A program made the position numbers and the translations under genes. Of a stretch of DNA of 64,000 bases, positions 16,343 through 34,600 are shown in pieces. This DNA comes from Klebsormidium nitens (lineage: Eukaryota > Plantae > Klebsormidiophyceae). Each line of letters begins with the position of its first letter. The first letter of the stretch is position 1. Location of the stretch: positions 124,001 through 188,000 of the forward strand of contig DF237007.1 in NCBI GenBank assembly GCA_000708835.1, given 5' to 3'. Under the pieces are notes generated by a model that searched no databases, had not been told where the DNA came from, and was given only the letters and a program-made list of their open reading frames with translations.

Positions 16343-16744
16343 TTAATAGCTGGTACCTGTCTACCTTGAAGCATCATGGCAAGACAGAGGGCAGCTCTAG
16401 CTGTAGTTCCAGCATCAAGCAGGGCCGCCTCACTTGCGCTTCACCTTTTACGCAAACCCTTGAACTCGGAGCTGGTCCTCCAGCCGTTTTAGTCTAGAGT
16501 ATAATCAGGGATGTATGGGCGCCTTTCAGCAGAACAGGTCCTTGACTAGTTTTGGAGCAGAAGCTCATATGATTCGTCGGAGGTGGACTCTTTCATTCGG
16601 GGCACATGGGTGAACGGCTTTGGTCCTCCCTACCACCTACTTGAGTGTTCTGAGCTGCATAGCGCTGATCGGAGCACCTCTGTGCTGTCCTACTTAGTCA
16701 TCCCTCCAAGAACCAACTTACAACCCCGCCCAAGCTTGGACAAA

Positions 16745-19700
16745 ATGGCAGGCCGGCGCTTCTTCCCTGTGGCTTTTAGCCTCTTCTGCTTCTTTCTTGG
16801 GGCACTGCCAAGTGGACTCTCTGCTCAGGGCCTTGTTGCGGTCCCGTCCACAATGACCCACAAGCTGGGCGCTTACTACATCAGCGCGCTTGGGAAGGAC
16901 CTCACTTTCTACCAGCTACTGAACGGGCGCCACCAACGAGGGACCAACGCATACAACCTTGTCAATGGCATCGGGGACAGCGCAGATCCCATCCGAGCCG
17001 CCAAAGAAACCTCGCCGGTCCGAGGCTACTACAAGAGCTGGAGCATCGGGGGCCGGGTCATTGTCGATGTCTTCTACAAGCTCGTGCGATGCCCGGGCGG
17101 AGACCCTTCCAACTGCTTGGCCTTTGAGCGTATCATCCCTGTCAATGCCCCTCGCCTTTCTGGCGCTCCAGTTATTCCCACAGTGCTGAAGCAGAGTTTT
17201 GGGGTTCGCGGCCTGTGGCTCCTGAATGCCAACCAGGCTGCGGCCAACACCGTACTCAAGCAGCCGGCAAGTGAGGAGAAGTTATATGTGGACGACGTTT
17301 TTGACTCTGGAAGAATCTACTACAAGGTAGCGCCCCCGCCGCCCCCTTGCAGGTCTGCCTACCCCCAAACCTACCTCTATTCCATTGGGGAGTTCTTCGA
17401 CCGTCCGCAGTTCAACTGCGTACTTTTTGGGGGTGTCTATATCATGATGACCACTACTGATGAAGCAGGCTACACCGCAATGCAGCAGTATGGGACCTCG
17501 CCAGAAAACTGCGACGGGTCCCTTGCGCTGCTGTTCAACCTCATTGCTCCTCAGAGAGGTTTCCCTTCCTCAGGCCCACAGATTGTGTACCTTGCCCGGC
17601 GGCCAGGATCAGTTCCATTCACCCTTCAGCTAGCCTTCCCCTACACGCTCGATTGCGAACAGCTGCCTCGTAACGTGTCCCTCCTTCTTCAAGCTGCCAC
17701 CATCCTTGCTCAAGAGGGCAACGGAGTTGATGTCACCAAGAGCAGGGTAGGCAAAAACCTGGCCATACCCGAACCCATCACCTCCCTCGGTTTTGCCAAC
17801 GCCTGCACTCCTGTGTATGTGGCATACTACGGTGCCGCCGTCTGGGGACAGACGAATGGGATTCCAGAGACCAGTTCTGACAGCACCTTTCTAGAGACTC
17901 TCATCAGAACCAACGCGGGCGACACGTGCATTGCGGCCCCCTCAGTGAATGGTGGATTCTCGGGGCGGGACTATTTTGAGGACGCGTGTGCTCAGCTCTA
18001 TTTTGGGAACGCAACGCAGCAGCGGGAGGGGGTGGTGACTATGTTGCAGCTCGGTCCGACAGCTGTACCAGATCAGGTGGCATTTAATGCGGCGGTCAGT
18101 CGATGCGTCGGCAAAGGTGTATACACGCTTCCCATCCAAGGTATCCTTCCTCAGGTGAGTATCTCCCAAGCAGTGTCAACGTTTGCAATAGCTTTCGGAT
18201 CCAAGACTCTTCAAGATCGCCTATTGCAAGAAGTCAACAAAATTGGAAGTTATCCACATTTTTAAGTACGGGAGCCGATCAGGGTCTATTGCGTGAGGAC
18301 TTTAAGGCTGTCTCTGTCTCTGTCATTGCGCTGATGATTGTCAAGGGCGCAATCTGCAAACAAGCCTGAAGCCCATGTACTTGTCTGTCTCTTCCGAGAG
18401 CATTAAACGAGGCCCAACTTCCAAGAATTGTCTTAGTAAAAGAGAGAACTGATGGACATTTTAATCCGATGGACACGGTGACATTGTAGTGTGAGCTTCT
18501 GCTGACGTGTTGGGTTTTCATATGAGTCGTAGACAACGATCAGGAAGGATGAGCGGAGTTCGTCCCCAATCATCCCGGCGGTTACATCATTGGGAATATG
18601 AATACCAACATCTCAGGGGCATCTCAGTTATATAACTTGCAATCCTGGTTACCTGCTGGGAAAGGCGCCCCTGCCCCCTTAACCAAGAGCCGTGGTTAGA
18701 TCACGATAGATCGAACCGAATGAAGATTCTTATATCGTCGATTTCTACTGGCCGCGTTCCGAAACCGTGCTAACTTGAAGGCTTCTCTCATCCCTAGCCA
18801 ATCTCAATGCCACCGTTGCCTCCCGGGATCCCTGTCTTACGTCCCCCAATGAGCAGAGAGCCAACGAGCCCATGCCTCATCCGTTTCGTTTCATCCCGAC
18901 AGATTGCGATCGACTTTGACGCCACTAAAGCGTCCCTCCTCGCTTCCACCGAAGTCAAGGTCCACCTCGACTCGGTCGCCGCAAACGCCGCCTCCGTGGT
19001 GGCCCTCGAAATTGCCCTCGCCTCCTGCGGGGCGTTCGTCACGAGGACGATCGCCCGCTCTAGTTACTACCGCACGCGGCGCCTGTCCAACTTCACGGCG
19101 CGCCTGCTGGCGTGTCTCGCCACCCTAGTTGCGGTGACCGTTCTCAACGTGCCGAATTTCGCGCTGATCGACCGGTCACTGAGCAACCATCGCGCGCGGC
19201 GCGTTTTCGCCGCCGCGAGCTCGGCGCAATACAAGCCGAGCAACTGCTCGGCCGTCCTCCTCTCCGAGACGCACGCCTTCGTGACCGTCGAGGGCTCGTC
19301 GGCGACCGCGGTGATCGGCGTCGCGCTCTACGTCCTCGCCGCGTGCTACGCGGTGTGGGACACGTGGGCGCTCTTCGGTGACGTCATCAGGGGCAGCGCT
19401 GACGCACGGCGCTGCCTGGGCAACGCGACCGTGGAGGACGGGCGGCGCATCACGGTCGAGTGGAGGGAAACGGACGGCAGGTTGCACGACCTGCTCAACC
19501 CCGCGGCTGTCCTGAAAGCGGGCGAAATGGCTGACTACGAGCTGCGCAGCGCCAGGTTGCGCGCAACAATATGTGGCCGGAGAAGCGGGACTCCCCCCGG
19601 GCGGCGTTTCCGAGCTCCGGAGCCTAAGCATTTGCTGGCGGTGAGTTTGAAAAAATCTCGTCTGTGCTTCTCGGCTCTATTTCCCGGATAGTATCGCTTC

Positions 19701-21289: not shown

Positions 21290-22480
21290 AGCTGCGCATG
21301 CCAAGCGCGCTTGATGCTAACAACATCACATTCATAATGTCCAGTTTAAAGGTCATCTCTGAAGCAATTCTGCACCAATCCCTTGCGATGGCCTATAGCC
21401 ACACATCTTGAGCTCATTTTACAGAAATACCGTCTCAGGATCTGCAAGGCTGGTATTACTCTCCTCCGAGAATTACAGCTCATTGTCCGCCACGCTGTCG
21501 AAGCTCGGCAAGAGCACCGCGGCCGGCGTCGACCTCCGCGCCCTTTGCCGCCTCGCGGCCGCGGGCGACTGCCGCGCACCCTAGTCATTGAACCCCAAAA
21601 GGCGCGCGCCCGCGACGCTCTGGGGCCGCTTCAAGTTGCTGTTCGGCTGCTCGCTCCCAGCAACGAACGGTGATCTTGACGTCCCGGTCTGCGCTCGGGA
21701 GGATCCGGTTGCCCCGACAGAAGCTTCCTTGATGCGACGTTCGTCGACGACGAACTTCCTGTGACCCTCGTTCCGCTGATGGACGCCGGCGGCGACGGAA
21801 CCGCTTGCCACGTCATCCTGCTCGTGCGCGAGCGGGTTGCTGAACGCGCGCCACTCCGCCGGGCTCAGCAGCTTTTCCGGCGCCGGAACGGGCCTCACTC
21901 GAGGCGGCGAGTACAGATTCCGCCGGCGACGGACTGAGCGGGCGCTCCCCTCCAAACGGTTCCCCAATCCTTATCCTTCGAGTGCTCGTTCTCCGGACAG
22001 CATACTCGGGGCTTCCCAGCGCCTGCGGCGAGAAGCTCGCGTGTCTAGTTGGGCCCAGCGACCGGGGCTTCTTCTCAACCCCGCCGGCGCGGGGTTTGGA
22101 GGGTTGGCGCGGTCGCGGCCGCGGCCGCGTTCGCGTCATCTTCCCCACTGCCAGGGTCGGAGGTGTAAAACTCGACGGGGGTCTCGATCTCGACGGCGGC
22201 GGTGTAAGCGGCCCTTGAAGCCTGGAAGTGGTCCGTCACGAGGCGCGTCACCCCGCGGTGGCGCGCCGCGCGCGCGTGAGCGGCGCGCTTGCGCTAATTC
22301 AGAGACGGGCCGGGGAATGAATGTTCACAGGGATCGCTTTAAACAAAGTTCTGCTTCAGTATTGTAACATGTATCTGTATATATATCAAGCTGTTGTTCT
22401 GCTCCAGGGTTTCCTTTTCCTCAGAAACTTATTTAGCCGCTTTCAAGCGTCACGATCATGACCTGAGAGAGTCTCTGTTG
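21290..22480 (-). pseudogene. Duplicated, frameshifted copy of the SFI1-like last exon with flanking intron and 3' sequence (source ~31545-32770)
   Basis: Long near-identical blocks, e.g. acagaaata(c/t)cgtctcaggatctgcaaggctgg at 21421 vs 31670 and gcgtgagcggcgcgcttgcgct at ~22275 vs ~32565, with several indels that break the frame. Confidence 0.9.
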
Positions 22481-23865: not shown

Positions 23866-26800
23866 TCAGACGCTACCGGTCAGATATCCGCACAGAATAA
23901 AGTACTTCTTTCCCGTGACAAGCTGTCGAACGGGCTCGACCCACGTGTACTTGTTAGCACCGTTGAGGGCATAGTTGATGTACTGCGGTTTGCCCTTGGC
24001 AAAAGCGGCCAACAATGCAGCAGCCACCTCCGGGGTTTCGCTTTCCTGCATAATGAGTCGTCGGCAAAGTGTTTAAGGCCGAATCACTTCTGCCTAATCA
24101 AAACGGGATCCACATTAGGCCTTGTTGTTTGAACTAGACTGCCGACCGTTTTCACTCCGCACAAGAAGCACAGCTCTTGACCGATGAAGCGGATACTCCT
24201 GAGCTAGGAACAAGCTGTGCAAAGCACTGCGTGGTGCGAAGGCTCACAGCAGTACTGCAGGCTTGGAAACTAGCCGGCCAGACACAGACATGTTTTAAGT
24301 TGATTCACAATAGTGCGTCAGCCAGCCCATTACATAGTCGATGATAAGGACGAGGTTGACTGCAAGATCGGCGTTTGCAAGTCAACAGTTCTTGATTCGT
24401 TTCACGACTGATGATGAGAAAAGAGCAGCGTATAGAAAGCGGGCCTGGACGGACGGAAGCGCCTACCACTGGGGGTTTTCCGGCCTTTGCGAAGACGTCG
24501 CCGTGCGCCAAACAGCGGTAACCTGTTGCCGGGTCTGCTTCATAAACCTGGATGTAAAAGCCCCCGAGAGTCCTTCCGGGATAAACCTGTTTGTTGACGG
24601 CGTCGATCAACGGCTGAGCGTTCGGCGCGAAATGGAGGAGGCGGCCGAAGTTGCTGGCGAGAGTGTAGGCCACCACTGGCGTGCAGAAGGTGTACGTGTT
24701 GTAGAGGCACTGCTGAACCTCGGTGTAACCCTGCGGGCAACACACAACTGTGCGTTACTCTCCTTCAAAGTCAACTTTGTTCTTCAGCTGAGAAGGTCAC
24801 ATTCCGTACTGCGGAACTGCAGTCTCTTTCAAATACGACTTTGTCACTGAGCTTCGGAAGCGCGCGTCACGTTGCCCAGTGCACCAAAACGTCGTTGATG
24901 TGGCAACGGCCTCACGTTGTGAGAGAACACTTTGTCTGATCGCCGTTCGATCTCCGACTGATTCCAATCATCATAATGGATAACATTGTGTCTGATGCAT
25001 GCCAGGGTCAAACGGGGCCGCCGGAATATACAACGGTGCGCCAGGGCTTCGACAAGGATCAGACATGTCCGAAAGGTGTCTGAAACCTGTCCGAAGCCTG
25101 TCTGATGCGTTTGGACCTTCTGTGGACCGCCTTTGATGACTTTGGCTGACCAAAAAGCTTTGCAATCAAAGCGAGAAGTGGGCAAATACCTTCAGACATA
25201 CGCCTTTAGCAGTCAACCGTTTAGAAGCTAGCGCTCAACTGAGCTTGAGAAATTCCGGTTAAGGGTTCCAGAATTACTCCAAAGTTTTGGGGCTCGCGGG
25301 CTACTCACTGCGAACACGATATAACCCCCCGGCAAAGACGCCACGTAGTTTTTCTTCAGGCCGAGGTCCGCGGCCCCAAGGTTGATGTACTCGTAGGTGC
25401 CCCCCCCTCCAACCGCGGCTAAACTTTTGACCACTTGGACGTAGTTTGCGGAAGTAGGGTATCTGATGTCGTCATACTCGACTTGAAAAGGAGTGCCCAG
25501 CTCGGACGTGTTTACGAATGCAACCCCGATGGTGTTTGAATCCAGCACCGCAGGATAGAAGCCGTTGGAGATGTACTTCGGATCTTTTTGGTTGATTGCT
25601 TCGTATACCTGGAGAGAGGAAGAAAATAAGGCTGTAAGCCCTCCGGGATTGGATACTTGTCGAGATCCACAAAAAGGAGGCTGAAGAACTTAGAGAGAGC
25701 TTGCACAGATGACAATTCGAACACGAGTTGACTGCTGCCACCAGAATAATGCTCAATGCGCCCACTCTTCGCAGCTGTGTTCTTGAATTGCTGACACTTA
25801 TAGTCATGCTGAACACGAGCTGGTTGGAAGATAGGCAGCAGCTGTTTCAATGAAGAAAACGGCAAAGAAATGAGCAGCTTGGAAGGTGTCTTTCCGTACC
25901 TTTCTCGGGTCGCTTGCAGCTTTCACGTCAGCAATCACTCTGTCGACCAGATTGCGCATGGTGGCATACTCGCAGCCGGTTTCCTTGGTCTTGGGACTCG
26001 TGCTGCAAGTGGGCACTGAGAAAGACCCATCCTGCACAGCATCATGTATCTTAGCTTCGTGACAAATGTCCACTTTCAATTGGCGCCAGGCCTTGACATG
26101 TGAGTCCGACTCGAGTCCGACCTGAAGATCAATCTGGCTTCCTTATCATGCAAGCAGCCGAACACCTTGAATATCAGCGGTAAGAAACGGCTCTCTCTTC
26201 CGCTTAGGTGGGCGATCATTTTCAAATGCAGACAGGCACGTGGCCCCCGCACGCTTGCGGCCGAGTTGAGAAAAGCAAGATTGGCAGAGCACAAATCTAT
26301 CGAGCAAGCTCGTGGCTCAATCTCGAAACGAGGACGTTCCTAAGGACGACACGTTCTGAGCAGGAAGCAATGCAGCATAATTCGCGGAACCTATTCCCAT
26401 GCACAAAGCTCATGTCGAAAAAGAAGTGGCTCGTACCGGCAGTTGAAGCGGTGCTTGGGAAGTCAAGTAGCCTGACAAGACGAAGAACTTCCTGCCCGTA
26501 ACGATTTGCTCAACGGGCTGGAGCCACGAGTACTTGACGCGGCCATTCGTAACATAGCTGATGTACTGAGGTATCCCTTGGTTGAACGCATTCGTCAGCA
26601 CGGCAGCCACGTCTGGTGTCTCGCTTTGCTGCGACAAAACGACCTAGGGTCAGCTCAAACGCAGGCCCGAAACTGAAGACGTGGCCCTAAAATGCAACAG
26701 CAGCCTTGCAAGAGCACCACAGAGCGATAGCGAGCTTCCTTCCCATCGGTCGTTTTGCGCCTTATTGTAAGTTTTGCTGACATGCATGTGTTTGCGTATT

Positions 26801-28590
26801 ATCAACGGCTGATGCTCTGTTCTAAGAGCCTCGGCCCACCACATCGACTTCTAGCTAGCGATGTGAATTGGGCCTTGATTCTGCCTGATCTGAATTCCGA
26901 CACATGGTTTGGTGCTTTGAGTCGGAAAGGGGTACAAGGTTTGCAAACGACTCAGGAAGCCAAACCCACTGGCGCCTCGAGTTTCCAAAAAGGCGACAAG
27001 AGAAGTCGGAGCAGGAAAAGGTCCCACCTGAGGGGTTGAGCCAGCTTTTGCGAAGTCGGCCCCGTTTGCCAGACATACATATCCGGTTGCAGGGTTTGCG
27101 TCATACACTTGAACATAGAAGCCCCCAGGGAAGACCCCTGGGAAGACTTGCTTGTTGACGGCATCGATCAATGGCTGGGGGTCTGGCTCAAATGTCAAAG
27201 TGTTGGCAAAACTGGTCCCTAGTGTGTAGGCCGCTACCGGGCTGCAGAATGTATAAGTGGCGTACAGGCACTCCGCGACCTCAGTGTACCCCTGAAAAAG
27301 CAAGAAAGAATGAGCTTAATCAATGGTTGAATACTTTTCGCACATTAGCAATACTGCTTCACTGCAGAGATGAAACGTGTTTTTGGTGTAGTGAGACTTG
27401 GGAATGCATTCGTGGACTAGAACTGCCCACTTGAATAAGCAGTGGCTTCTTCTGTTGAGCTTGTTCAGAGAAGCAGCTTCAAGCGTGGGTAATCGGTATC
27501 GAAGCATCCCCCCAAAGTACTGCTGATTAGGCACTTGTCTCGTTAGCCAGTCAGACCTTCAAACCGTGGGCACCAAATGCGTCTAGGTTGAGATTCGAGA
27601 CTAACAAGAATAAAGTAAACTTACGGCTCCCACAACAAATCCATTTGGAAGGCCTGCAATGTAGCCCTTCTTCAGACCTAGGCCCCGTGCGCCAGTGAAA
27701 AGATATTCAGTGGTCCCTCCGCCAGCTGCCGCTAGTGCCTGGTAAGTCTGAAAAAAGTTGGGGTATATCGGGATGCCGATGTCATTGTTTGCCTCAGCCT
27801 GGTACTTCCCAACACTGGAGACATTGTTGTGCGCAACGCGCCGGCCCACGTTGTCATACACGAACGCGTAGAATCCCTGGAAGTTGTACCGGGGGTTGCG
27901 GGCGTTGATTGCGGCATAGACCTGCAGAGGCAATGCTACTGTATATGAATTCATGCAAATGGATAGCAAGAAAACCTCACAGCTGATAGAGACTGGCTGG
28001 ACTCAAGTGTATCAAGATTACACCCTTACTCCCATTAGGCGTGCACCCTGCTGCCCAGATTGATCATTGTTCTATCTGACAGTTGTGAGCTACTTCCCGT
28101 TTACTATTCATGCTCTTATAAGCAAGCAAGCCCACATTCGAAAGGACCTGCAGGCCCTTAGCAACAACTGTAAAACAGACAGGCAGGTTCTCAGGACACC
28201 ACAGCTCTTGGATCTTGGTGAAGCGCTCCGGTGCCTTGTCAACAAACTAGAAGCGAACTATCAGTCAACTGCGTCTAGTGGTAGCACCCGCCTGGATAAC
28301 ATAGCAAGTATCTCAATCCATCCATGACATGCAATGCACCACTGCCACTCTCGCATTAGAGCTATCAAGACTTAAACAAGCAAAGACCCGTTGCTCAAGG
28401 TTGGGCTTCCAAGAAGAAGGTGAAGTGGACTTCGAGCGCGGGTCTTTACATCTTCAGGGTCGCTTGCTGCCGCAACGTCTTCAATCACGTTGAGCACCAG
28501 GTCCCGGCTGATTGCCAGCTCACAGCCAGTCTCCTTGGCTGGGTCGTTCACACAGTTGGTGATGGATTGCGGCTGGGACTGGCAAAGCGG
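23866..28590 (-). CDS. Protein with four tandem Cache-like (sCache_2-type) sensor domains, built as two 4-exon repeats; exons complement(join(23866..24045,24467..24730,25309..25608,25900..26031,26437..26628,27028..27291,27625..27921,28450..28590)); first exon unresolved (~28.7-28.95 kb)
   Basis: All introns are phase 0 and GT-AG, with matching exon sizes between the two repeats (141/132, 297/300, 264/264, 192/180). Motifs VYAAIN...GFYAFVYDNVGRRVAH...VG...ALAAAGGGTTEY...KKGYI...FVVGAGY and GGFYIQVYE...CLAHG match the bacterial single-Cache pattern (YVFVxDxxGxxLAHG...GxGWVxY...KxSYV...IVGxGxY). Confidence 0.75.
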
Positions 28591-29081: not shown

Positions 29082-29163
29082 TGTTAGAAGTATTTGCGCA
29101 CTGCCACTCGGGCCACACTGGCGCCAGTGTGGCCCGAGTGGCAGTGCGCAAATACTTCTAACA
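29082..29163. repeat. Perfect 82-bp palindrome (41-bp arms, no spacer)
   Basis: tgttagaagtatttgcgcactgccactcgggccacactggc|gccagtgtggcccgagtggcagtgcgcaaatacttctaaca; the arms are exact reverse complements. Confidence 0.98.
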
Positions 29164-29167
29164 AAAA

Positions 29168-29215
29168 TGCGGTGACCGGACTGGGTTCGATTCCCAGCGA
29201 GAACGCGAAGTTTTG
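29168..29215 (+). other. tRNA-like 3' fragment (T-arm/B-box) followed by a TTTT run; not a complete tRNA
   Basis: ctggg-ttcgatt-cccag is a T-stem-loop containing the B-box GGTTCGATTCC, followed by cgagaac and gaagtttt. I found no complementary 5' acceptor strand or A-box upstream. Confidence 0.45.
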
Positions 29216-29708
29216 CGGATAATTACAGTGCAGATTGAATCACACAGCTGCTAAAATGAGCTCAGCAGCAAATGCTTACCAGCTGTAGACAAGCAACGGC
29301 CCCCACAAGCAGTACTAGAAGGTAGCTCAGCTGCTTCTTCTCCATGGCGCCCACTTTTAATAACGTCAGGGAATTCGAAAACCCAAGAATGACTTTGGCT
29401 TCAGTTCAAAATATACGACTCTTTCGCCCTAGTGAAGTTCTCAGGAATTAGGTACCGGTAGGTAGCGCAGAGCGGTACTGGGTGAATGATCCAAAACCTG
29501 CAACTGTGTCGAATTGACTGCACAGTGTGCACTTTGCACTCCTGATCGAGGCTGTGTTCAAGTGCGGCAGGAGTCAGTGGACCAGTGCAGGCGGGCAATG
29601 CAGCTACCTACGTCCTAGTTAGCTGGCACGGTACAGCAGGCTGGCGCAGCACTGGTCTACAGACTAGGGTCCTACCGTATGTAGGTACCTACGTAGGTAC
29701 GTATAGCC

Positions 29709-30113: not shown

Positions 30114-31667
30114 GTACTACTATAGCCTATCATACCGTAGGTCTGTACCACCATAGAGGGGTACCGTACGTGCCGAAGAGGCTCAGTGTACACACGGGCT
30201 CTGCCAATCACAGTGTACACACGGGCCACGGCCGCATACCGATACCGTACCGGAGACAGCTGACTCCTGTGGATTTGAATTAATTTGGTCCGACGATACC
30301 GGTAGCCTACGTAAAGGTTTTGACCGGTAGCTACTGCCAATAGGCGTCGGACTCCGCCCTGAAGCAGCTGGCAGCGGAATCTGGTCCCGGCCGGAACTCA
30401 GCAGCGCGCAGACAGTATCATTGGCATGTGTCTGGTTCGTTTACTAGTCAGTATAATAGGACGGATATGTGCCGGCCGATTATAACCCATTTTACTTGAA
30501 GCATTGGCCTTGGAAGACCTCAACACTGATCGACGAGCTCGGATCCATTCAGTCGAAGAAGACTCCTCCAAAGTTGCAAAATCGAACCCCGTCGTCTAAT
30601 ACCTCCAGATGAAAGAAGTTTGAGAGAGTTGAGACGATGTTTCACCGTTCAAGTAGCGACGACGGCTTTCTCGGTTCAGCTTCAACCGGTTCTTGCCACA
30701 TTTCAGGCGTTGATGCTTTGGTGTAGACGGCGGCGTTGCACCGCATCACTTGCAATATGTGGCCGTGCAGGGAGCGACTGAGTTTAAGTCATATGATAGT
30801 AGCCGATCGAAATGCCAGAGATACACTCAGTACGTTAGACGTCACGAAACTTAAGCCGATCCATCGCAGTCAATGCTTACTCCGAACTGTACGTGCGTAT
30901 GCAGATCCAAGATGGTCGGCTTATTGGTTCATTCGCCACCGGCCATGCAACAAATGATCAAGATAAGAGCGCCTTTGAAAACATCGAAGATCTCTGTCTT
31001 CGCTGCAGATAGTTACACACGACTTTCCCTGCCCGACCATTCGAAAGCCAACGAGGAATATTCAACAACGACATCTCGACTCTTACACTACACCATAGTA
31101 GTAGGCTTCGCTCGGCAAAGTCAAGGCGGAAGCACGACGAAGCAACGCGCAAGGCTTTGGAACATTGATACACCAGACTTGCGCCTCGGAGCGCAACTGG
31201 CTTAGGGTATTACTTCGTAAACCCTTCCGCTGCGTATCCGCACTAAGGCTACGTAACGGTGCCCGGCAGATTACTCTGTATGCGAAGCTTCCATGGTGTA
31301 GCAGGGCGGCGCGCTGCTTACTTGGCCAACAGCTTAGTATCTAGGTCTCCTCTTATCAGGTGCACACTGATGCTTTCGATATTTTATGCTTTCGATATTA
31401 ATCAATGAATAACCAATGCTTTCGAAGTTGATCTTCCTTGTTCGAGAACGCTCGCCGGGCAGACCGCCTGTGAAAGGTGGTTTCGTGAGACTTTTTGCAG
31501 AACAACATATGATGTGACTCGCGTAGCCGCGCCGCCGCTTAAAGTGCGCCGGCCAAGCGATGATGACTCCCAATCAGTACTCACGGGCTCCGTGTTGAGA
31601 TCAGTCCTGAGGCACCCTTGCTGGGAGTGAAACCTTTGCAAGGCCCGGTCTTAAATTTAAGCTCTAT

Positions 31668-34600
31668 CTACAGAAATATCGTCTCAGGATCTGCAAGGCT
31701 GGTGTTACTCTCCTCTGAGAACAGCTCATTGTCCGCCACGCTGTCGAAGCTCGGCAGGAGCACCGCGGCCGGCGTCGACCACCGCGCCCTTTGCCGCCTC
31801 GCGGCCGCGGGCGACTGCCGCGCGCCCTCAAACCCCAAAAGCCGCGCGCCCGCGACGCTCTGGGGCCGCTTGCTGTGGAAACTTTCTCCCGCTCTAGTTC
31901 TCGGCGGCTCGCTCCTAGCAACGGACGGTGATCTTGACGTCCCGGTCTGCGCTCGGGAGGATCCGGTTGCCCCGACAGAAGCTGGCGTCACCCTGCCCGT
32001 TCCAATCCCTGATGCGACGTCATCGACGAATTTCTTACCCTCGTTCCGCTGATGGACGCCGCCGGGGACGGATCCGCTCCCCACGTCATTCTGCTCGTGC
32101 GCGAGCGGGTTGCTGAACGCGCGCCACTCCGCCGGGCTCGGCAGCTTTTCCGGCGCCGGCACGGGCCTCACTCGGGGCGGCGAGTACAGATTCCGCGGCG
32201 GACTGAGCGGGCGCTCCCCTCCAAACGGATCCCCAACTCTTATCCTCCGGGCACTCGTTCTCCGCACAGCATACTCGGGGCTTCCCACCGACTGCGGCGA
32301 GAAGCTCGCGTGTCTAGTGGGGCCCAGCGACCGGGGCTTCCTCCCGGCCGGGCTGCTGAAGGACCAGCCGCGCCGGCGCGGGGTTTGGAGGGTTGGCGTG
32401 GTCGCGGCCGCGGCCGCGCTCGCGTCGTCTTCCCCGGGGTCGGACGTGTAACACTCGACGGCGGTGCGCAGGCGGTGGGAGGTGTCTTCGACGGCGGCGG
32501 TGTAAGCGGCCCACGCCTGGAAGTGGTCCGTCACGAGGCGCGTCCCGCGGTGGCGCCCCGCGCGCGCGTGAGCGGCGCGCTTGCGCTTCCTGCAGTGGGG
32601 AATACCGGTTTAAACACAGAAATTGAATGTCAACAAGGCACTGTTCTGCTACAATGTTGTGGCTGCATATCAAGCTGTGGCTTGGTTGCACGGTTTTGTT
32701 TTCCTGAGAGACTTACCCTAGCCTGTTCCGAGCATCACGCGCTCAGAATCATGACCCGCAAGAGTCTATGTCGATGAATGCAGGACGAGGGGGCCTCGAG
32801 TCTTTGAATCGTTTCAACTTTTATCTGAAGGAGGCAAATCATGTTGAACCCTTGATCAGTCGACGCCAGTGAGTACCCACGTGTCAGACGTCCTACGTCA
32901 AACCCTGATCACCACGAGTGTGAGACGTAACACACAAAGTGAAGTGTAGAGTGCATCCAAGATGCACGTCTATTCCACAAAAAACTTAACCCGCCTACCT
33001 TTCAATGGTTCGGTCCCTCCAGCCCTTGACAGCCGCCACCGCGCGCGTCCGTTGCTCCCCCGCATCCAGCATCGCCCAGCAGCGCGCGAGCGCGCCCCTC
33101 CGCTCCTCGCACAAAGCCATAAACCCTTTCCACCGCTGCATGCTCCGCCAGAGTTGGTTCGCGGCCGCAAACGCGCGCGCCGCGCCCTCGGTCTCTTTCT
33201 GCTGGGCGATGACCTGGCGCCAGAGCTGCCACGTGGCGGCCTTGGACTGGCGAAGGCGGCGCGCGGAGAAGGCCGCGACGCGCGCGGAGCGTTCTTTGTG
33301 CGCGCGCCACGTGGCGAAGACGGCGTGGCAGAGGGCCATCTGGCGCCTCCTTGCGCTGCAGAGGTGAAATTAAGGACATTGATGCACGTGTCCAAACAGT
33401 CATGATGCTCCCACAAGTTGTTAAAACTTGTCACAATTTTTTTTGCAGCTTCATGCTACAAGGCATGACTCTCACATCCGCATTTGTATCGCAGTGGAGT
33501 TTTGCGGTAATGTGGGGGATGAGTGCAGTTTCAAAGCATCAGTCGAAGTGCAAATCTTGCTGTCCACATGTTCCATCACTTCTGCCGAACGTCGACCTTC
33601 AACTTTGCCGGTTTCCTGCTTTTTGATTCTCAACACTAATTGCTTGAAGCGGGCTACCCCCAACAAACGTGTCATCAAAGACAATTCTGAAGCAAGTAAC
33701 ACTCATAGAAGGTCAGTGTCAGAGCCCCGACCTTTTTTCGGCGACCACGTACGCCTCCCGGAGCGCGAGCTGTCGCCGGTGGTGCTCCTCCCGCGTCACC
33801 GCCATTTCGTGCGCGAGCTGCTGCCACGCCCACATCATGCGCTGCACGCGCGTCGACGTGATGACGGACGCCACGTCAGCCGCGCGCGCGCGCCAGTAGG
33901 CCTTCTCCGCATGGCGCGCTCGCCAGGCCTGGTTAAACGGGAGAGAATGCAGTGTCGAGATTGAGTTACACGATGAGAATTCAAAACCCCGTTCACCAAT
34001 CTGTGCCTCTAAACGGGACTCCAGATTCAGCTTCCATATAAACGGGGTCTTTGGTATTCCAGCTTTTTTGTAAAAGGCTCGCGGCCTCTTCGTCAGTTGG
34101 TCACTCGAAGTAACCCAGTATTGCAGACCGGATTTTCTGATATCACACCCAACCTCGAATCCATGCTACTGCCCCAAGCGTTCCTTTCTGACGGGTCTCT
34201 TTTAGCTTTGCCTCTTGAGATCCAAAGGCCTCAAACGTCCTTGTATCTTATCATCTGAACCGTTGATCTCAATCATAAAGCTAAGAAATAACTAGAGTGG
34301 GGTCACCCACCAGCAGAGTCCTTCGGAGGATTCCGACTCGGTGGTGCCGCATCGCCGTCGCGGCGTGCTTCCAGTCAGCGTAGCATTGCGCCACGTGGCG
34401 CCGGAGGTTGCTCGCGGCGAGCTCCTTCTCCAGCGCCAAAAGGTGCTTCCTGCACATGATGTCAGCGGGACGTCAGCATATGGCTACATCTGGTACGACA
34501 AGAAGGAGCGTGAGAGTGGTTTTTCTCCGCAGGCTAATGTTTTACTCTCCTACCGGGGTTTGTGCCAGCAAGCAGACAGGATATTATCAAGTAAAATGTC

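What the first reader, a model, noticed from the sequence alone, without database searches (positions are those of the whole stretch)
23866..28590. Intron-containing algal gene built from four tandem bacterial-type Cache sensor domains, with no signalling domain
Seen: eight phase-0 exons form two homologous 4-exon blocks. Each block encodes two subdomains that resemble each other (DPEDVYAAIN/DPQPLIDAVN; QGFYAFVYD/GGFYVQVYD; VAH/CLAHG; GGGxxEY...KKxY(I/V)...VVGAGY). The ORF ends at 23866 with no TM helix, kinase or cyclase. Known: this motif set is typical of bacterial single Cache (sCache_2/Cache_2) ligand-binding domains of chemoreceptors, histidine kinases and small standalone periplasmic proteins. 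The well-known eukaryotic Cache-fold proteins are alpha2-delta channel subunits and CHASE receptors, which differ. Inference: a horizontally acquired and domesticated (intronised, internally duplicated) extracellular small-molecule-binding protein, possibly a soluble partner of a receptor.
Basis: partly seen in the sequence, partly recalled or inferred. Interest (0 to 1): 0.8.

Follow-up and report, generated by a model that had tools for sequence, protein, structure and literature searches.

The report
Secreted four-module Cache protein, no output
An intact, spliced gene of the streptophyte alga Klebsormidium nitens encodes a secreted protein made only of four bacterial-style "single Cache" ligand-binding modules, with no membrane anchor or signalling domain; this architecture has not been described in the plant lineage, and databases list the protein as hypothetical.

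Summary
Eight phase-0 GT..AG exons (28590-23866, minus strand) form two 4-exon blocks that are 56% identical (E 1e-99). They match the annotated K. nitens protein KFL_000580250 100% over residues 23-608. I found the missing first exon (29345-29280), which encodes a signal peptide.

All four modules are sCache_2-like. This rests on profile-profile matches of 96-98% probability, on predicted folds whose best hit is the sCache_2 structure 4K08 (Z 12.3 and 12.8), and on ESM Atlas neighbours that are all sCache_2/dCache_2. No module passes Pfam's own threshold.

There is no TM helix and no output domain. The annotated 105-aa tail comes from a flanking GC-rich repeat and is doubtful.

In the databases searched, the family is confined to Klebsormidium: three paralogs plus one ortholog from another sample. 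It is under purifying selection (dN/dS 0.10-0.14), and all copies share the same intron positions.

No prokaryote holds a close relative. The nearest kin are cysteine-bracketed tandem sCache_2 ectodomains of diatom and haptophyte receptor cyclase/PARP proteins.

Two modules keep the full Tyr-His-Lys carboxylate triad, which suggests extracellular binding of small organic acids.

The scan had already noted the two paralogs on other DNA of this genome (s1-358384, s1-334324).

The parts
29280..29345 (-).
   Evidence: Exact match to residues 1-22 of the annotated protein P0013; highest hydrophobicity of the protein, KD19 2.18
28450..28590 (-). Exon 2: end of the signal region, Cys pair (C-x9-C) and N-terminal helix of module A1
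   Evidence: Phase 0, AG..GT; helix 22-41 at pLDDT about 90 in the block model
27625..27921 (-). Exon 3: core of module A1 (GFY.FVYD, VAH, GGG..EY, LKK.Y); keeps the full Tyr-His-Tyr-Lys set
   Evidence: residue mapping
27028..27291 (-). Exon 4: first half of module B1 (C-x7-C, helix, GGFYVQVYD, CLANG: His replaced by Asn)
26437..26628 (-). Exon 5: second half of module B1 (helices, three strands, KYSW, GRKFF) and the linker to block 2
25900..26031 (-). Exon 6: Cys pair and N-terminal helix of module A2 (start of block 2)
25309..25608 (-). Exon 7: core of module A2 (GFYPAVLD, VAF: His replaced by Phe)
24467..24730 (-). Exon 8: first half of module B2 (C-x7-C, GGFYIQVYE, CLAHG)
23866..24045 (-). 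Exon 9: second half of module B2, ending ...GYLTGSV plus TGA at 23868-23866. The public annotation instead leaves this exon at 23878 through a G|GTAGC donor
   Evidence: paralogs end at the same point
21584..21898 (-). Annotated alternative last exon (105-aa hydrophilic tail of P0013); doubtful, lies inside a GC-rich repeat
21408..22146 (.). Downstream copy of a GC-rich direct repeat flanking the gene
   Evidence: 89-97% identity to 31657-32435; GC 0.60-0.68
31657..32435 (.). Upstream copy of the same GC-rich repeat, carrying a 288-aa ORF with no Pfam family

Best explanation
The locus is the intact two-block member of a small Klebsormidium-restricted gene family. The product enters the secretory pathway through an N-terminal signal peptide and has no membrane anchor. 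It consists of four consecutive single-Cache (sCache_2-like) modules. Each module has a disulfide-type cysteine pair, a long N-terminal helix and a PAS-like alpha/beta core. (Shown: gene model, module homology, fold, lack of TM and output domain, purifying selection.) Inferred mechanism: the protein sits outside the cell, in the wall or mucilage, and binds small carboxylate-bearing metabolites in the Cache pockets. Modules A1 and B2 keep the Tyr/His/Lys carboxylate triad of characterised sCache_2 sensors. Modules B1 and A2 have replaced the His, so they have a different specificity or are structural. With no output domain of its own, the protein can act only by binding. It may present ligand to, or change its contact with, a separate membrane protein, as alpha2-delta/CACHD1 or bacterial binding-protein/chemoreceptor pairs do. 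Alternatively it may sequester or scavenge organic acids. Origin (inferred): a one-block gene (signal exon plus 4 exons) was duplicated in frame through its phase-0 introns. The module type is closest to the ectodomains of protist tandem-Cache receptor cyclases.
For: Gene model. Module A vs bacterial sCache_2 repeats: HHalign 97.0%, E 1e-10. Module A and module B vs Pfam-significant eukaryote-type sCache_2 modules: 98.2%, E 4.5e-14 and 96.1%, E 3.5e-9 (Pfam status of those modules). A joint profile hits the solved sCache_2 sequences 4K08 (E 8.5e-6) and 5G4Y (E 7e-4). Fold: for both modules the best VIA hit is 4K08, with Z 12.3 (2.8 A, 127 aa) and Z 12.8 (2.7 A, 123 aa), and 4EXO and 3UB6 reach Z 10.6-10.8 for both. 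These three entries are the sCache_2 structures listed by Upadhyay et al. 2016. Atlas: all top neighbours are sCache_2/dCache_2, scores 0.94-0.95. Secretion and no output. Constraint: dN/dS 0.10 for the one-block ortholog pair and 0.14 against the two-block paralog. Pocket residues: PscD Tyr90/His103/Tyr143/Lys156 mapped through the alignments.
Against: No module of the window protein passes a Pfam gathering threshold. No RNA evidence for this copy was found in the runs offered. Ligand binding is inferred from conserved residues only. The flanking hydrophobic pocket residues (PscD Trp92/Trp145) are mostly replaced, and two of the four modules lack the His. The public annotation gives a different C-terminus. 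The structure models rest on shallow alignments of 5 and 19 rows.
Confidence: 0.6

Rival explanations
1. The protein is a structural or adhesive wall/mucilage protein that reuses the Cache fold as a repeat scaffold and senses nothing.
For: There is no output domain and no membrane anchor. Two of the four modules have lost the pocket His. Long Cache-only arrays also exist as bacterial surface lipoproteins, e.g. P0008 with at least 15 modules, and as bacterial Cache-only clusters of about 330 and 570 aa.
Against: Modules A1 and B2 retain the complete carboxylate-binding set, and the Tyr and Lys/Arg positions are kept in all four modules. Purifying selection is strong.
Confidence: 0.17
2. The family came straight from a bacterium rather than from a eukaryote-type tandem-Cache ectodomain.
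For: Cache is overwhelmingly prokaryotic, and eukaryotic occurrences are generally ascribed to HGT (Upadhyay et al. 2016). No other green-lineage homolog was found. Bacterial Cache-only proteins of 2- and 4-module size exist and give TM 0.52-0.56 to the block.
Against: No prokaryotic protein scores better than E 4e-4 with the module A profile, while three eukaryote-type proteins score 1.7e-8 to 4e-4. Module B matches the bacterial repeats only at E 0.008, against 3.5e-9 for the eukaryote-type modules. The cysteine positions are shared with the eukaryote-type modules. In the tree both module clades sit inside the eukaryote-array radiation, but with SH-aLRT 93 on long branches and only one bacterial outgroup protein. 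Pattern scans of prokaryotic genomes found nothing.
Confidence: 0.2
3. The gene is really the ectodomain part of a receptor whose TM and effector exons lie downstream and were missed.
For: The closest relatives are ectodomains of TM receptors with cyclase or PARP. The public annotation does splice past the stop codon.
Against: The annotated extra exon is hydrophilic, has no domain and lies in a repeat with a second copy upstream. All three paralogs stop within 1-4 residues after the GYL[TA] motif. In L005 the next called gene downstream of the one-block paralog is on the opposite strand. No TM-like ORF was seen on the minus strand between 23866 and 21900.
Confidence: 0.04
4. The family is decaying and this copy is an unexpressed relic.
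For: No RNA contigs covered this gene in the four runs laid.
Against: The window copy has nine intact exons and canonical splice sites, with dN/dS 0.14 against the paralog. The runs offered were small and held almost none of the locus, so they say nothing about expression.
Confidence: 0.04

Closest known systems
Bacterial sCache_2 ligand-binding domains (PF17200; structures 4K08 Adeh_3718, 5G4Y/5G4Z PscD, 4EXO/2QHK, 3UB6 TlpB)
   Same: Same fold and element order. Best structural matches are Z 12.3-12.8. There is profile-level homology. Location is extracytoplasmic. The Tyr/His/Tyr/Lys carboxylate-binding positions are kept in two modules.
   Different: The bacterial domains are single modules inserted between two TM helices of chemoreceptors or kinases. 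Here four modules are strung together behind a signal peptide with no TM and no transmitter. Each module has an added cysteine pair. The sequences are too divergent for the Pfam threshold.
Eukaryote-type tandem sCache_2 receptor ectodomains (unnamed; e.g. P0017 with TM + class III cyclase, P0006 with TM + PARP; Nitzschia MMETSP transcript P0037, Prymnesium MAG protein P0042)
   Same: Nearest sequence relatives: HHalign E 4.5e-14 and 3.5e-9. Modules are arranged head to tail. Both have the cysteine pair before helix 1, and the B modules share C-[VL]-A-H-G. They are eukaryotic.
   Different: Those proteins carry a Cys-rich stalk, a TM helix and a cytoplasmic cyclase or WWE/PARP effector. The Klebsormidium proteins stop after the last Cache module. 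Identity is only about 15-28%.
Prokaryotic Cache-only arrays (P0008 lipoprotein with at least 15 modules; Atlas clusters of about 330 and 570 aa listing only sCache_2/dCache_2)
   Same: The architecture is output-less and exported, made only of tandem sCache_2 modules. The 2- and 4-module sizes match the Klebsormidium one- and two-block genes. Structural TM is 0.52-0.56 over two modules.
   Different: They are prokaryotic, lack the cysteine signature (one Cys in all of P0008), and show much weaker sequence similarity, especially to module B. Their function is also unknown.
Animal alpha2-delta subunits and CACHD1
   Same: They are eukaryotic extracellular Cache proteins without an enzymatic output that act through protein partners. 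This is a precedent for the proposed mode of action.
   Different: They have dCache_1 modules interleaved with a VWA domain and are membrane-attached. They give only mid-range structural matches (Z 7.8-9.5) and no sequence relationship was detected.
Plant and algal CHASE / AHK-type histidine kinase sensors
   Same: They are the documented Cache-clan sensors of the plant lineage.
   Different: They are embedded in TM histidine kinases. The CHASE structure 3T4J scores below the sCache_2 hits (Z 9.2 vs 12.8).

Membership tests
sCache_2 (Pfam PF17200, Cache clan) | Score at or above the Pfam gathering threshold (25 bits) | tested here: not met
   P0013 and each of its four modules give no sCache_2 hit; the best hit is sCache_3_2 at 14.9-16.0 bits against a cutoff of 28.4. 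The paralog P0001 reaches sCache_2 16.6 bits, E 0.0076.
sCache_2 (Pfam PF17200, Cache clan) | Profile-level homology to bona fide sCache_2 domains | tested here: met
   Module A vs bacterial repeats: 97%, E 1e-10. Modules A and B vs Pfam-positive eukaryote-type modules: 98.2% and 96.1%. The joint profile hits 4K08 at E 8.5e-6 and 5G4Y at E 7e-4. Module B directly against the bacterial repeats is not significant (E 0.008).
sCache_2 (Pfam PF17200, Cache clan) | Cache fold: long N-terminal helix plus a PAS-like beta-sheet core, closest to the sCache_2 structures | tested here: met
   Predicted models: 4K08 is the top hit for both modules (Z 12.3 and 12.8), with 4EXO and 3UB6 at Z 10.6-10.8. These are the sCache_2 PDB entries of Upadhyay 2016. 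These are predictions, not experimental structures.
sCache_2 (Pfam PF17200, Cache clan) | Extracytoplasmic location | tested here: met
   An N-terminal signal peptide exon and no other hydrophobic segment. This is a sequence prediction only.
sCache_2 carboxylate sensors (PscD/McpP/Adeh_3718 type) | Tyr90/His103/Lys156 triad (plus Tyr143) that hydrogen-bonds the carboxylate | tested here: inconclusive
   A1 and B2 keep Tyr, His, Tyr and Lys. B1 has Asn and A2 has Phe in place of His. The flanking Trp positions are mostly replaced.
Cache-containing signal transducers (MCP, HK, cyclase) | Covalent link to TM helices and a transmitter/output domain | tested here: not met
   No TM helix and no Pfam output domain in P0013, P0001 or P0002.
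Eukaryote-type Cys-bracketed tandem sCache_2 receptors (unnamed) | Cysteine pair before helix 1 and tandem modules | tested here: met
   The Cys columns align in HHalign and MAFFT: C-x7-C in the B modules, as in P0004/6/9/17, and C-x9-C (C-x10-C in A2) in the A modules.
Eukaryote-type Cys-bracketed tandem sCache_2 receptors (unnamed) | TM helix plus cytoplasmic cyclase or PARP effector | tested here: not met
   Absent from all three Klebsormidium paralogs.
alpha2-delta / CACHD1 | VWA domain with interleaved dCache_1 modules | tested here: not met
   No VWA or dCache_1 hit. Structural matches to 8S7C and 8X90 reach only Z 7.8-9.5.

The most novel reading that the evidence does not exclude
Klebsormidium uses soluble, multi-site Cache proteins as extracellular ligand shuttles or co-receptors for organic acids. 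This would be a eukaryotic counterpart of bacterial binding-protein/chemoreceptor pairs. The genes would derive from the shed ectodomain of a protist-type tandem-Cache receptor cyclase, obtained by eukaryote-to-eukaryote transfer, in a lineage close to the origin of land plants.
Probability: 0.15. Interest if true: 0.75.

Novelty: new variant of a known kind. Interest (0 to 1): 0.58.

Why it matters
The reference survey of Cache domains says they occur in plants and fungi only inside histidine kinases. A secreted, output-less array of four sCache_2 modules under purifying selection is a different use of the commonest prokaryotic extracellular sensor fold. The host, a terrestrial streptophyte alga, is used as a model for plant terrestrialisation.

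It gives a concrete, testable entry point into how such algae perceive or handle extracellular organic acids, for example from soil-crust bacteria.

It also exposes two barely described groups. One is the protist receptor cyclases and PARPs with tandem Cache ectodomains. The other is the prokaryotic Cache-only arrays.

In practical terms, three K. nitens 'hypothetical proteins' without Pfam hits can now be annotated.

Tried and rejected
- **Pfam on single exons and on whole modules:** only sub-threshold Cache hits.
- **PDB sequence search with Klebsormidium-only profiles:** nothing, or spurious hits. An Adhiron/cystatin hit at E 0.43 briefly suggested a cystatin-like fold. The structure models and fold searches ruled that out.
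- **The search for homologous proteins with P0001 and P0002:** returned only K. nitens proteins.
- **Pattern scans of prokaryotic genomes and JGI metagenomes:** no confirmable relative.
- **RNA evidence:** no listed run holds the locus. The four runs laid gave contigs only on an intronic hairpin, so expression and the true 3' end stay open.
- **Neighbouring gene as a Cache-bearing partner (16736-18265):** rejected at sequence level, HHalign E 0.4 and no Pfam family.
- **tRNA in intron 1:** ARAGORN and Rfam found none. Rfam gave only sub-threshold miRNA-like hairpin matches.
- **Module tree:** gave only moderate support (SH-aLRT 93) and used a single bacterial outgroup protein, so I do not treat it as settling the donor.
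Full report
**Observation**

On the minus strand, the ORF fragments between 28590 and 23866 join through canonical AG..GT borders into eight exons. Every exon length is divisible by three. The product has two halves that are 56% identical over 284 residues (E 1.4e-99). The A halves are 48% identical and the B halves 65%. The intron lengths are 291-578 bp.

The window is Klebsormidium nitens. The public protein KFL_000580250 (P0013, 713 aa) is 100% identical to my spliced product over its residues 23-608. This independently confirms every internal splice site.

- The first exon lies at 29345-29280. It encodes Met plus a 22-residue hydrophobic leader and is followed by a GTAAGC donor and a 689-bp intron.
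- The public model does not use the stop at 23866. It leaves the last exon at 23878 and joins it to 21898-21584, which adds a 105-residue hydrophilic tail with no domain.
- That tail exon sits inside a GC-rich element. A second copy, 89-97% identical, lies 10.25 kb away at 31657-32435, so the gene is bracketed by direct repeats.
- The two paralogs end one to four residues after the same GYL[TA] motif. I therefore regard the tail as a probable annotation fusion, but without RNA data I cannot prove it.

**What the modules are**

No module of this protein passes a Pfam threshold. The best hit is sCache_3_2 at 16 bits against a cutoff of 28.4, which explains the 'hypothetical protein' label.

An exhaustive HMMER scan with the exon 3 + exon 7 profile found only nine proteins at E <= 0.001 among 1.84 billion representatives:
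- Two are K. nitens paralog clusters, and one is an 86-aa fragment from another sample.
- Four carry Pfam-significant sCache_2 domains: P0004, P0006, P0008 and P0009.
- Two are repetitive false positives.

Profile-profile comparison then gave clear answers:
- Module A vs the repeats of the bacterial array P0008: 97.0%, E 1e-10 over 112 columns.
- Module A vs the eukaryote-type modules: 98.2%, E 4.5e-14.
- Module B vs the eukaryote-type modules: 96.1%, E 3.5e-9 over 132 columns, including the cysteine pair.
- Module B directly against the bacterial repeats, and A against B, align in the right register but are not significant.
- A joint profile of all these modules hits the solved sCache_2 sequences 4K08 (E 8.5e-6), 5G4Y (E 7e-4) and 4EXO/2QHK.

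**Structure**

An AlphaFold2 model of block 1 has a mean pLDDT of 62, with module A at 85-93. A model of module B alone, built on a 19-row alignment, has pLDDT 82.7 and pTM 0.79. Both show the same order of elements: a long helix, a short helix, two strands, helices, then three strands.

VIA-align against 48,161 chains puts the sCache_2 domain of Adeh_3718 (4K08) first for both modules:
- Module A: Z 12.3, 2.8 A, 127 of 144 residues.
- Module B: Z 12.8, 2.7 A, 123 residues.

4EXO and TlpB 3UB6 reach Z 10.6-10.8 for both modules. For module B, roughly the next 35 hits are all extracytoplasmic Cache/PDC sensors, and cytoplasmic PAS domains rank lower. Foldseek agrees.

4K08, 2QHK and 3UB6 are exactly the structures that the defining paper assigns to sCache_2. 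The ESM Atlas gives only sCache_2/dCache_2 clusters as neighbours, at 0.94-0.95 by features and TM up to 0.56 by structure.

The claim of four Cache modules therefore holds. The caveat is that it rests on remote homology and predicted structure.

**Topology**

Apart from the leader, no 19-residue window exceeds a Kyte-Doolittle mean of 1.06. The C-terminus is not hydrophobic. No kinase, cyclase, MCP or other output domain is found. The protein is therefore predicted to be secreted and soluble.

**Family and evolution**

K. nitens has three members:
- This gene.
- KFL_000610080: two blocks, 63% identical to this gene.
- KFL_007210060: one block, 55% identical.

Intron positions are the same in all three genes and in both blocks: signal exon | Cys-helix exon | A core | B first half | B second half. 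The introns are therefore older than the duplications. Because all phases are 0, an in-frame duplication of the four-exon cassette by recombination within introns is the simplest route to the two-block form.

In the module tree, the A2 modules of the two two-block genes pair up, and so do their B2 modules (SH-aLRT 96 and 99). The block duplication thus predates the split of those two genes.

A contig from another sample (L004) carries an ortholog of the one-block gene at 87-90% protein identity. For this pair dS is 0.71 and dN/dS is 0.10, while the introns barely align. The window gene against its two-block paralog gives dN/dS of about 0.14.

The window copy is intact.

**Origin**

Nothing closer than E 4e-4 exists in prokaryotes for the module A profile. 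Family-specific motif scans of 185,579 prokaryotic genomes and of JGI metagenomes confirmed no relative.

The nearest kin are arrays found in a Nitzschia transcriptome, a Prymnesium MAG, a EukProt single-cell genome and many marine contigs. Some continue into a TM helix and a class III cyclase (P0017), or into PARP (P0006; P0004 is followed by a WWE-PARP ORF). They share the cysteine pair before helix 1 and, with the B modules, the Cys of C-[VL]-A-H-G.

In the tree both Klebsormidium module clades fall inside this eukaryotic radiation, next to its first-module type. Support is only SH-aLRT 93, the stems are long, and there is a single bacterial outgroup protein.

On the other side, output-less Cache-only proteins do exist in prokaryotes. 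Examples are the lipoprotein P0008 with at least 15 modules, and Atlas clusters of about 330 and 570 aa.

My reading is that horizontal acquisition at some depth is plausible, because the family is isolated within the green lineage. The evidence favours a eukaryote-type array over a bacterium as the nearest source, and neither is proven.

**Mechanism**

In PscD, the carboxylate is held by Tyr90, His103, Tyr143 and Lys156 and packed between Trp92 and Trp145. Tyr90, His103 and Lys156 are conserved across sCache_2 (PMC5062169). I mapped these positions through the HMMER alignment to 5G4Y and the module alignment:
- All four modules keep the first Tyr (GFY), the second Tyr, and a Lys or Arg at the Lys156 position.
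- The His is present in A1 and B2. It is Asn in B1 and Phe in A2.
- The Trp positions are mostly replaced, except the second one in the B modules.

I infer that at least two modules bind small carboxylate-bearing ligands and that the other two have diverged. With no output domain, the protein must work by binding alone, either as a soluble co-receptor or shuttle, or as a scavenger or buffer. This step is inference.

The neighbouring signal-peptide gene suggested as a partner shows no Cache relationship.

**Literature**

The library holds no paper linking Cache domains with Klebsormidium or other streptophyte algae beyond histidine kinases. [quoted passage not shown]

**Limits**

No RNA run holding the locus was offered, so expression and the 3' end are unverified. 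The structural models use shallow alignments. The donor question needs a broader phylogeny.

Noticed in passing
window 29087-29220 (intron 1 of the gene): A perfect hairpin of about 66-72 nt (29087-29158) overlaps a tRNA-like 3' part with a GGTTCGATTCCC T-loop motif (to about 29218). Very short contigs at very high depth in one run (X6, up to about 20,000) pile up here. ARAGORN and Rfam call no tRNA; Rfam gives only sub-threshold miRNA-like hairpin matches.
   Followed up: partly
window 21408-22146 and 31657-32435: Two direct copies of a GC-rich (0.60-0.68) element, 89-97% identical and 10.25 kb apart, bracket the Cache gene. The upstream copy holds a 288-aa low-complexity ORF (31668-32534, minus strand) with no Pfam family. 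The downstream copy supplies the annotated C-terminal tail of KFL_000580250.
   Followed up: partly
window 16583-18265 (+): A convergent neighbouring gene has a clear signal peptide and a 509-aa ORF with no Pfam family. HHalign shows no relation to the Cache modules (E 0.4), so the suggested 'two-part sensing locus' has no sequence support.
   Followed up: partly
L006:10134-10840 (K. nitens DF237010.1, gene KFL_000610080): The two-block paralog has a frame break at the end of its third module (the frame runs into a stop after ...LGLKRSIAKALTSSSR). The public model bridges it with an odd splice that drops the GYTE..C start of the fourth module.
   Followed up: partly
P0017, P0006 (L002:90-3401), P0004, P0037, P0042: Diatom, haptophyte and marine-protist receptor-like proteins have 3-5 cysteine-bracketed tandem sCache_2 modules, a TM helix and a class III cyclase or (WWE-)PARP domain. 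I found no description of these in the paper library.
   Followed up: partly
L001:6001-12300 (metagenome contig ERZ19489113 s569.ptg000684l): A bacterial lipoprotein (lipobox ...IAGAC, Thr/Glu-rich linker) carries at least 15 head-to-tail sCache_2 modules and no output domain. It is a giant Cache-only array of unknown role.
   Followed up: no
L004:1467-3800 (Logan SRR23617307 contig): An ortholog of the one-block gene KFL_007210060 from another sample: 87-90% protein identity, same intron layout, dS 0.71. It probably comes from a different Klebsormidium species.
   Followed up: partly
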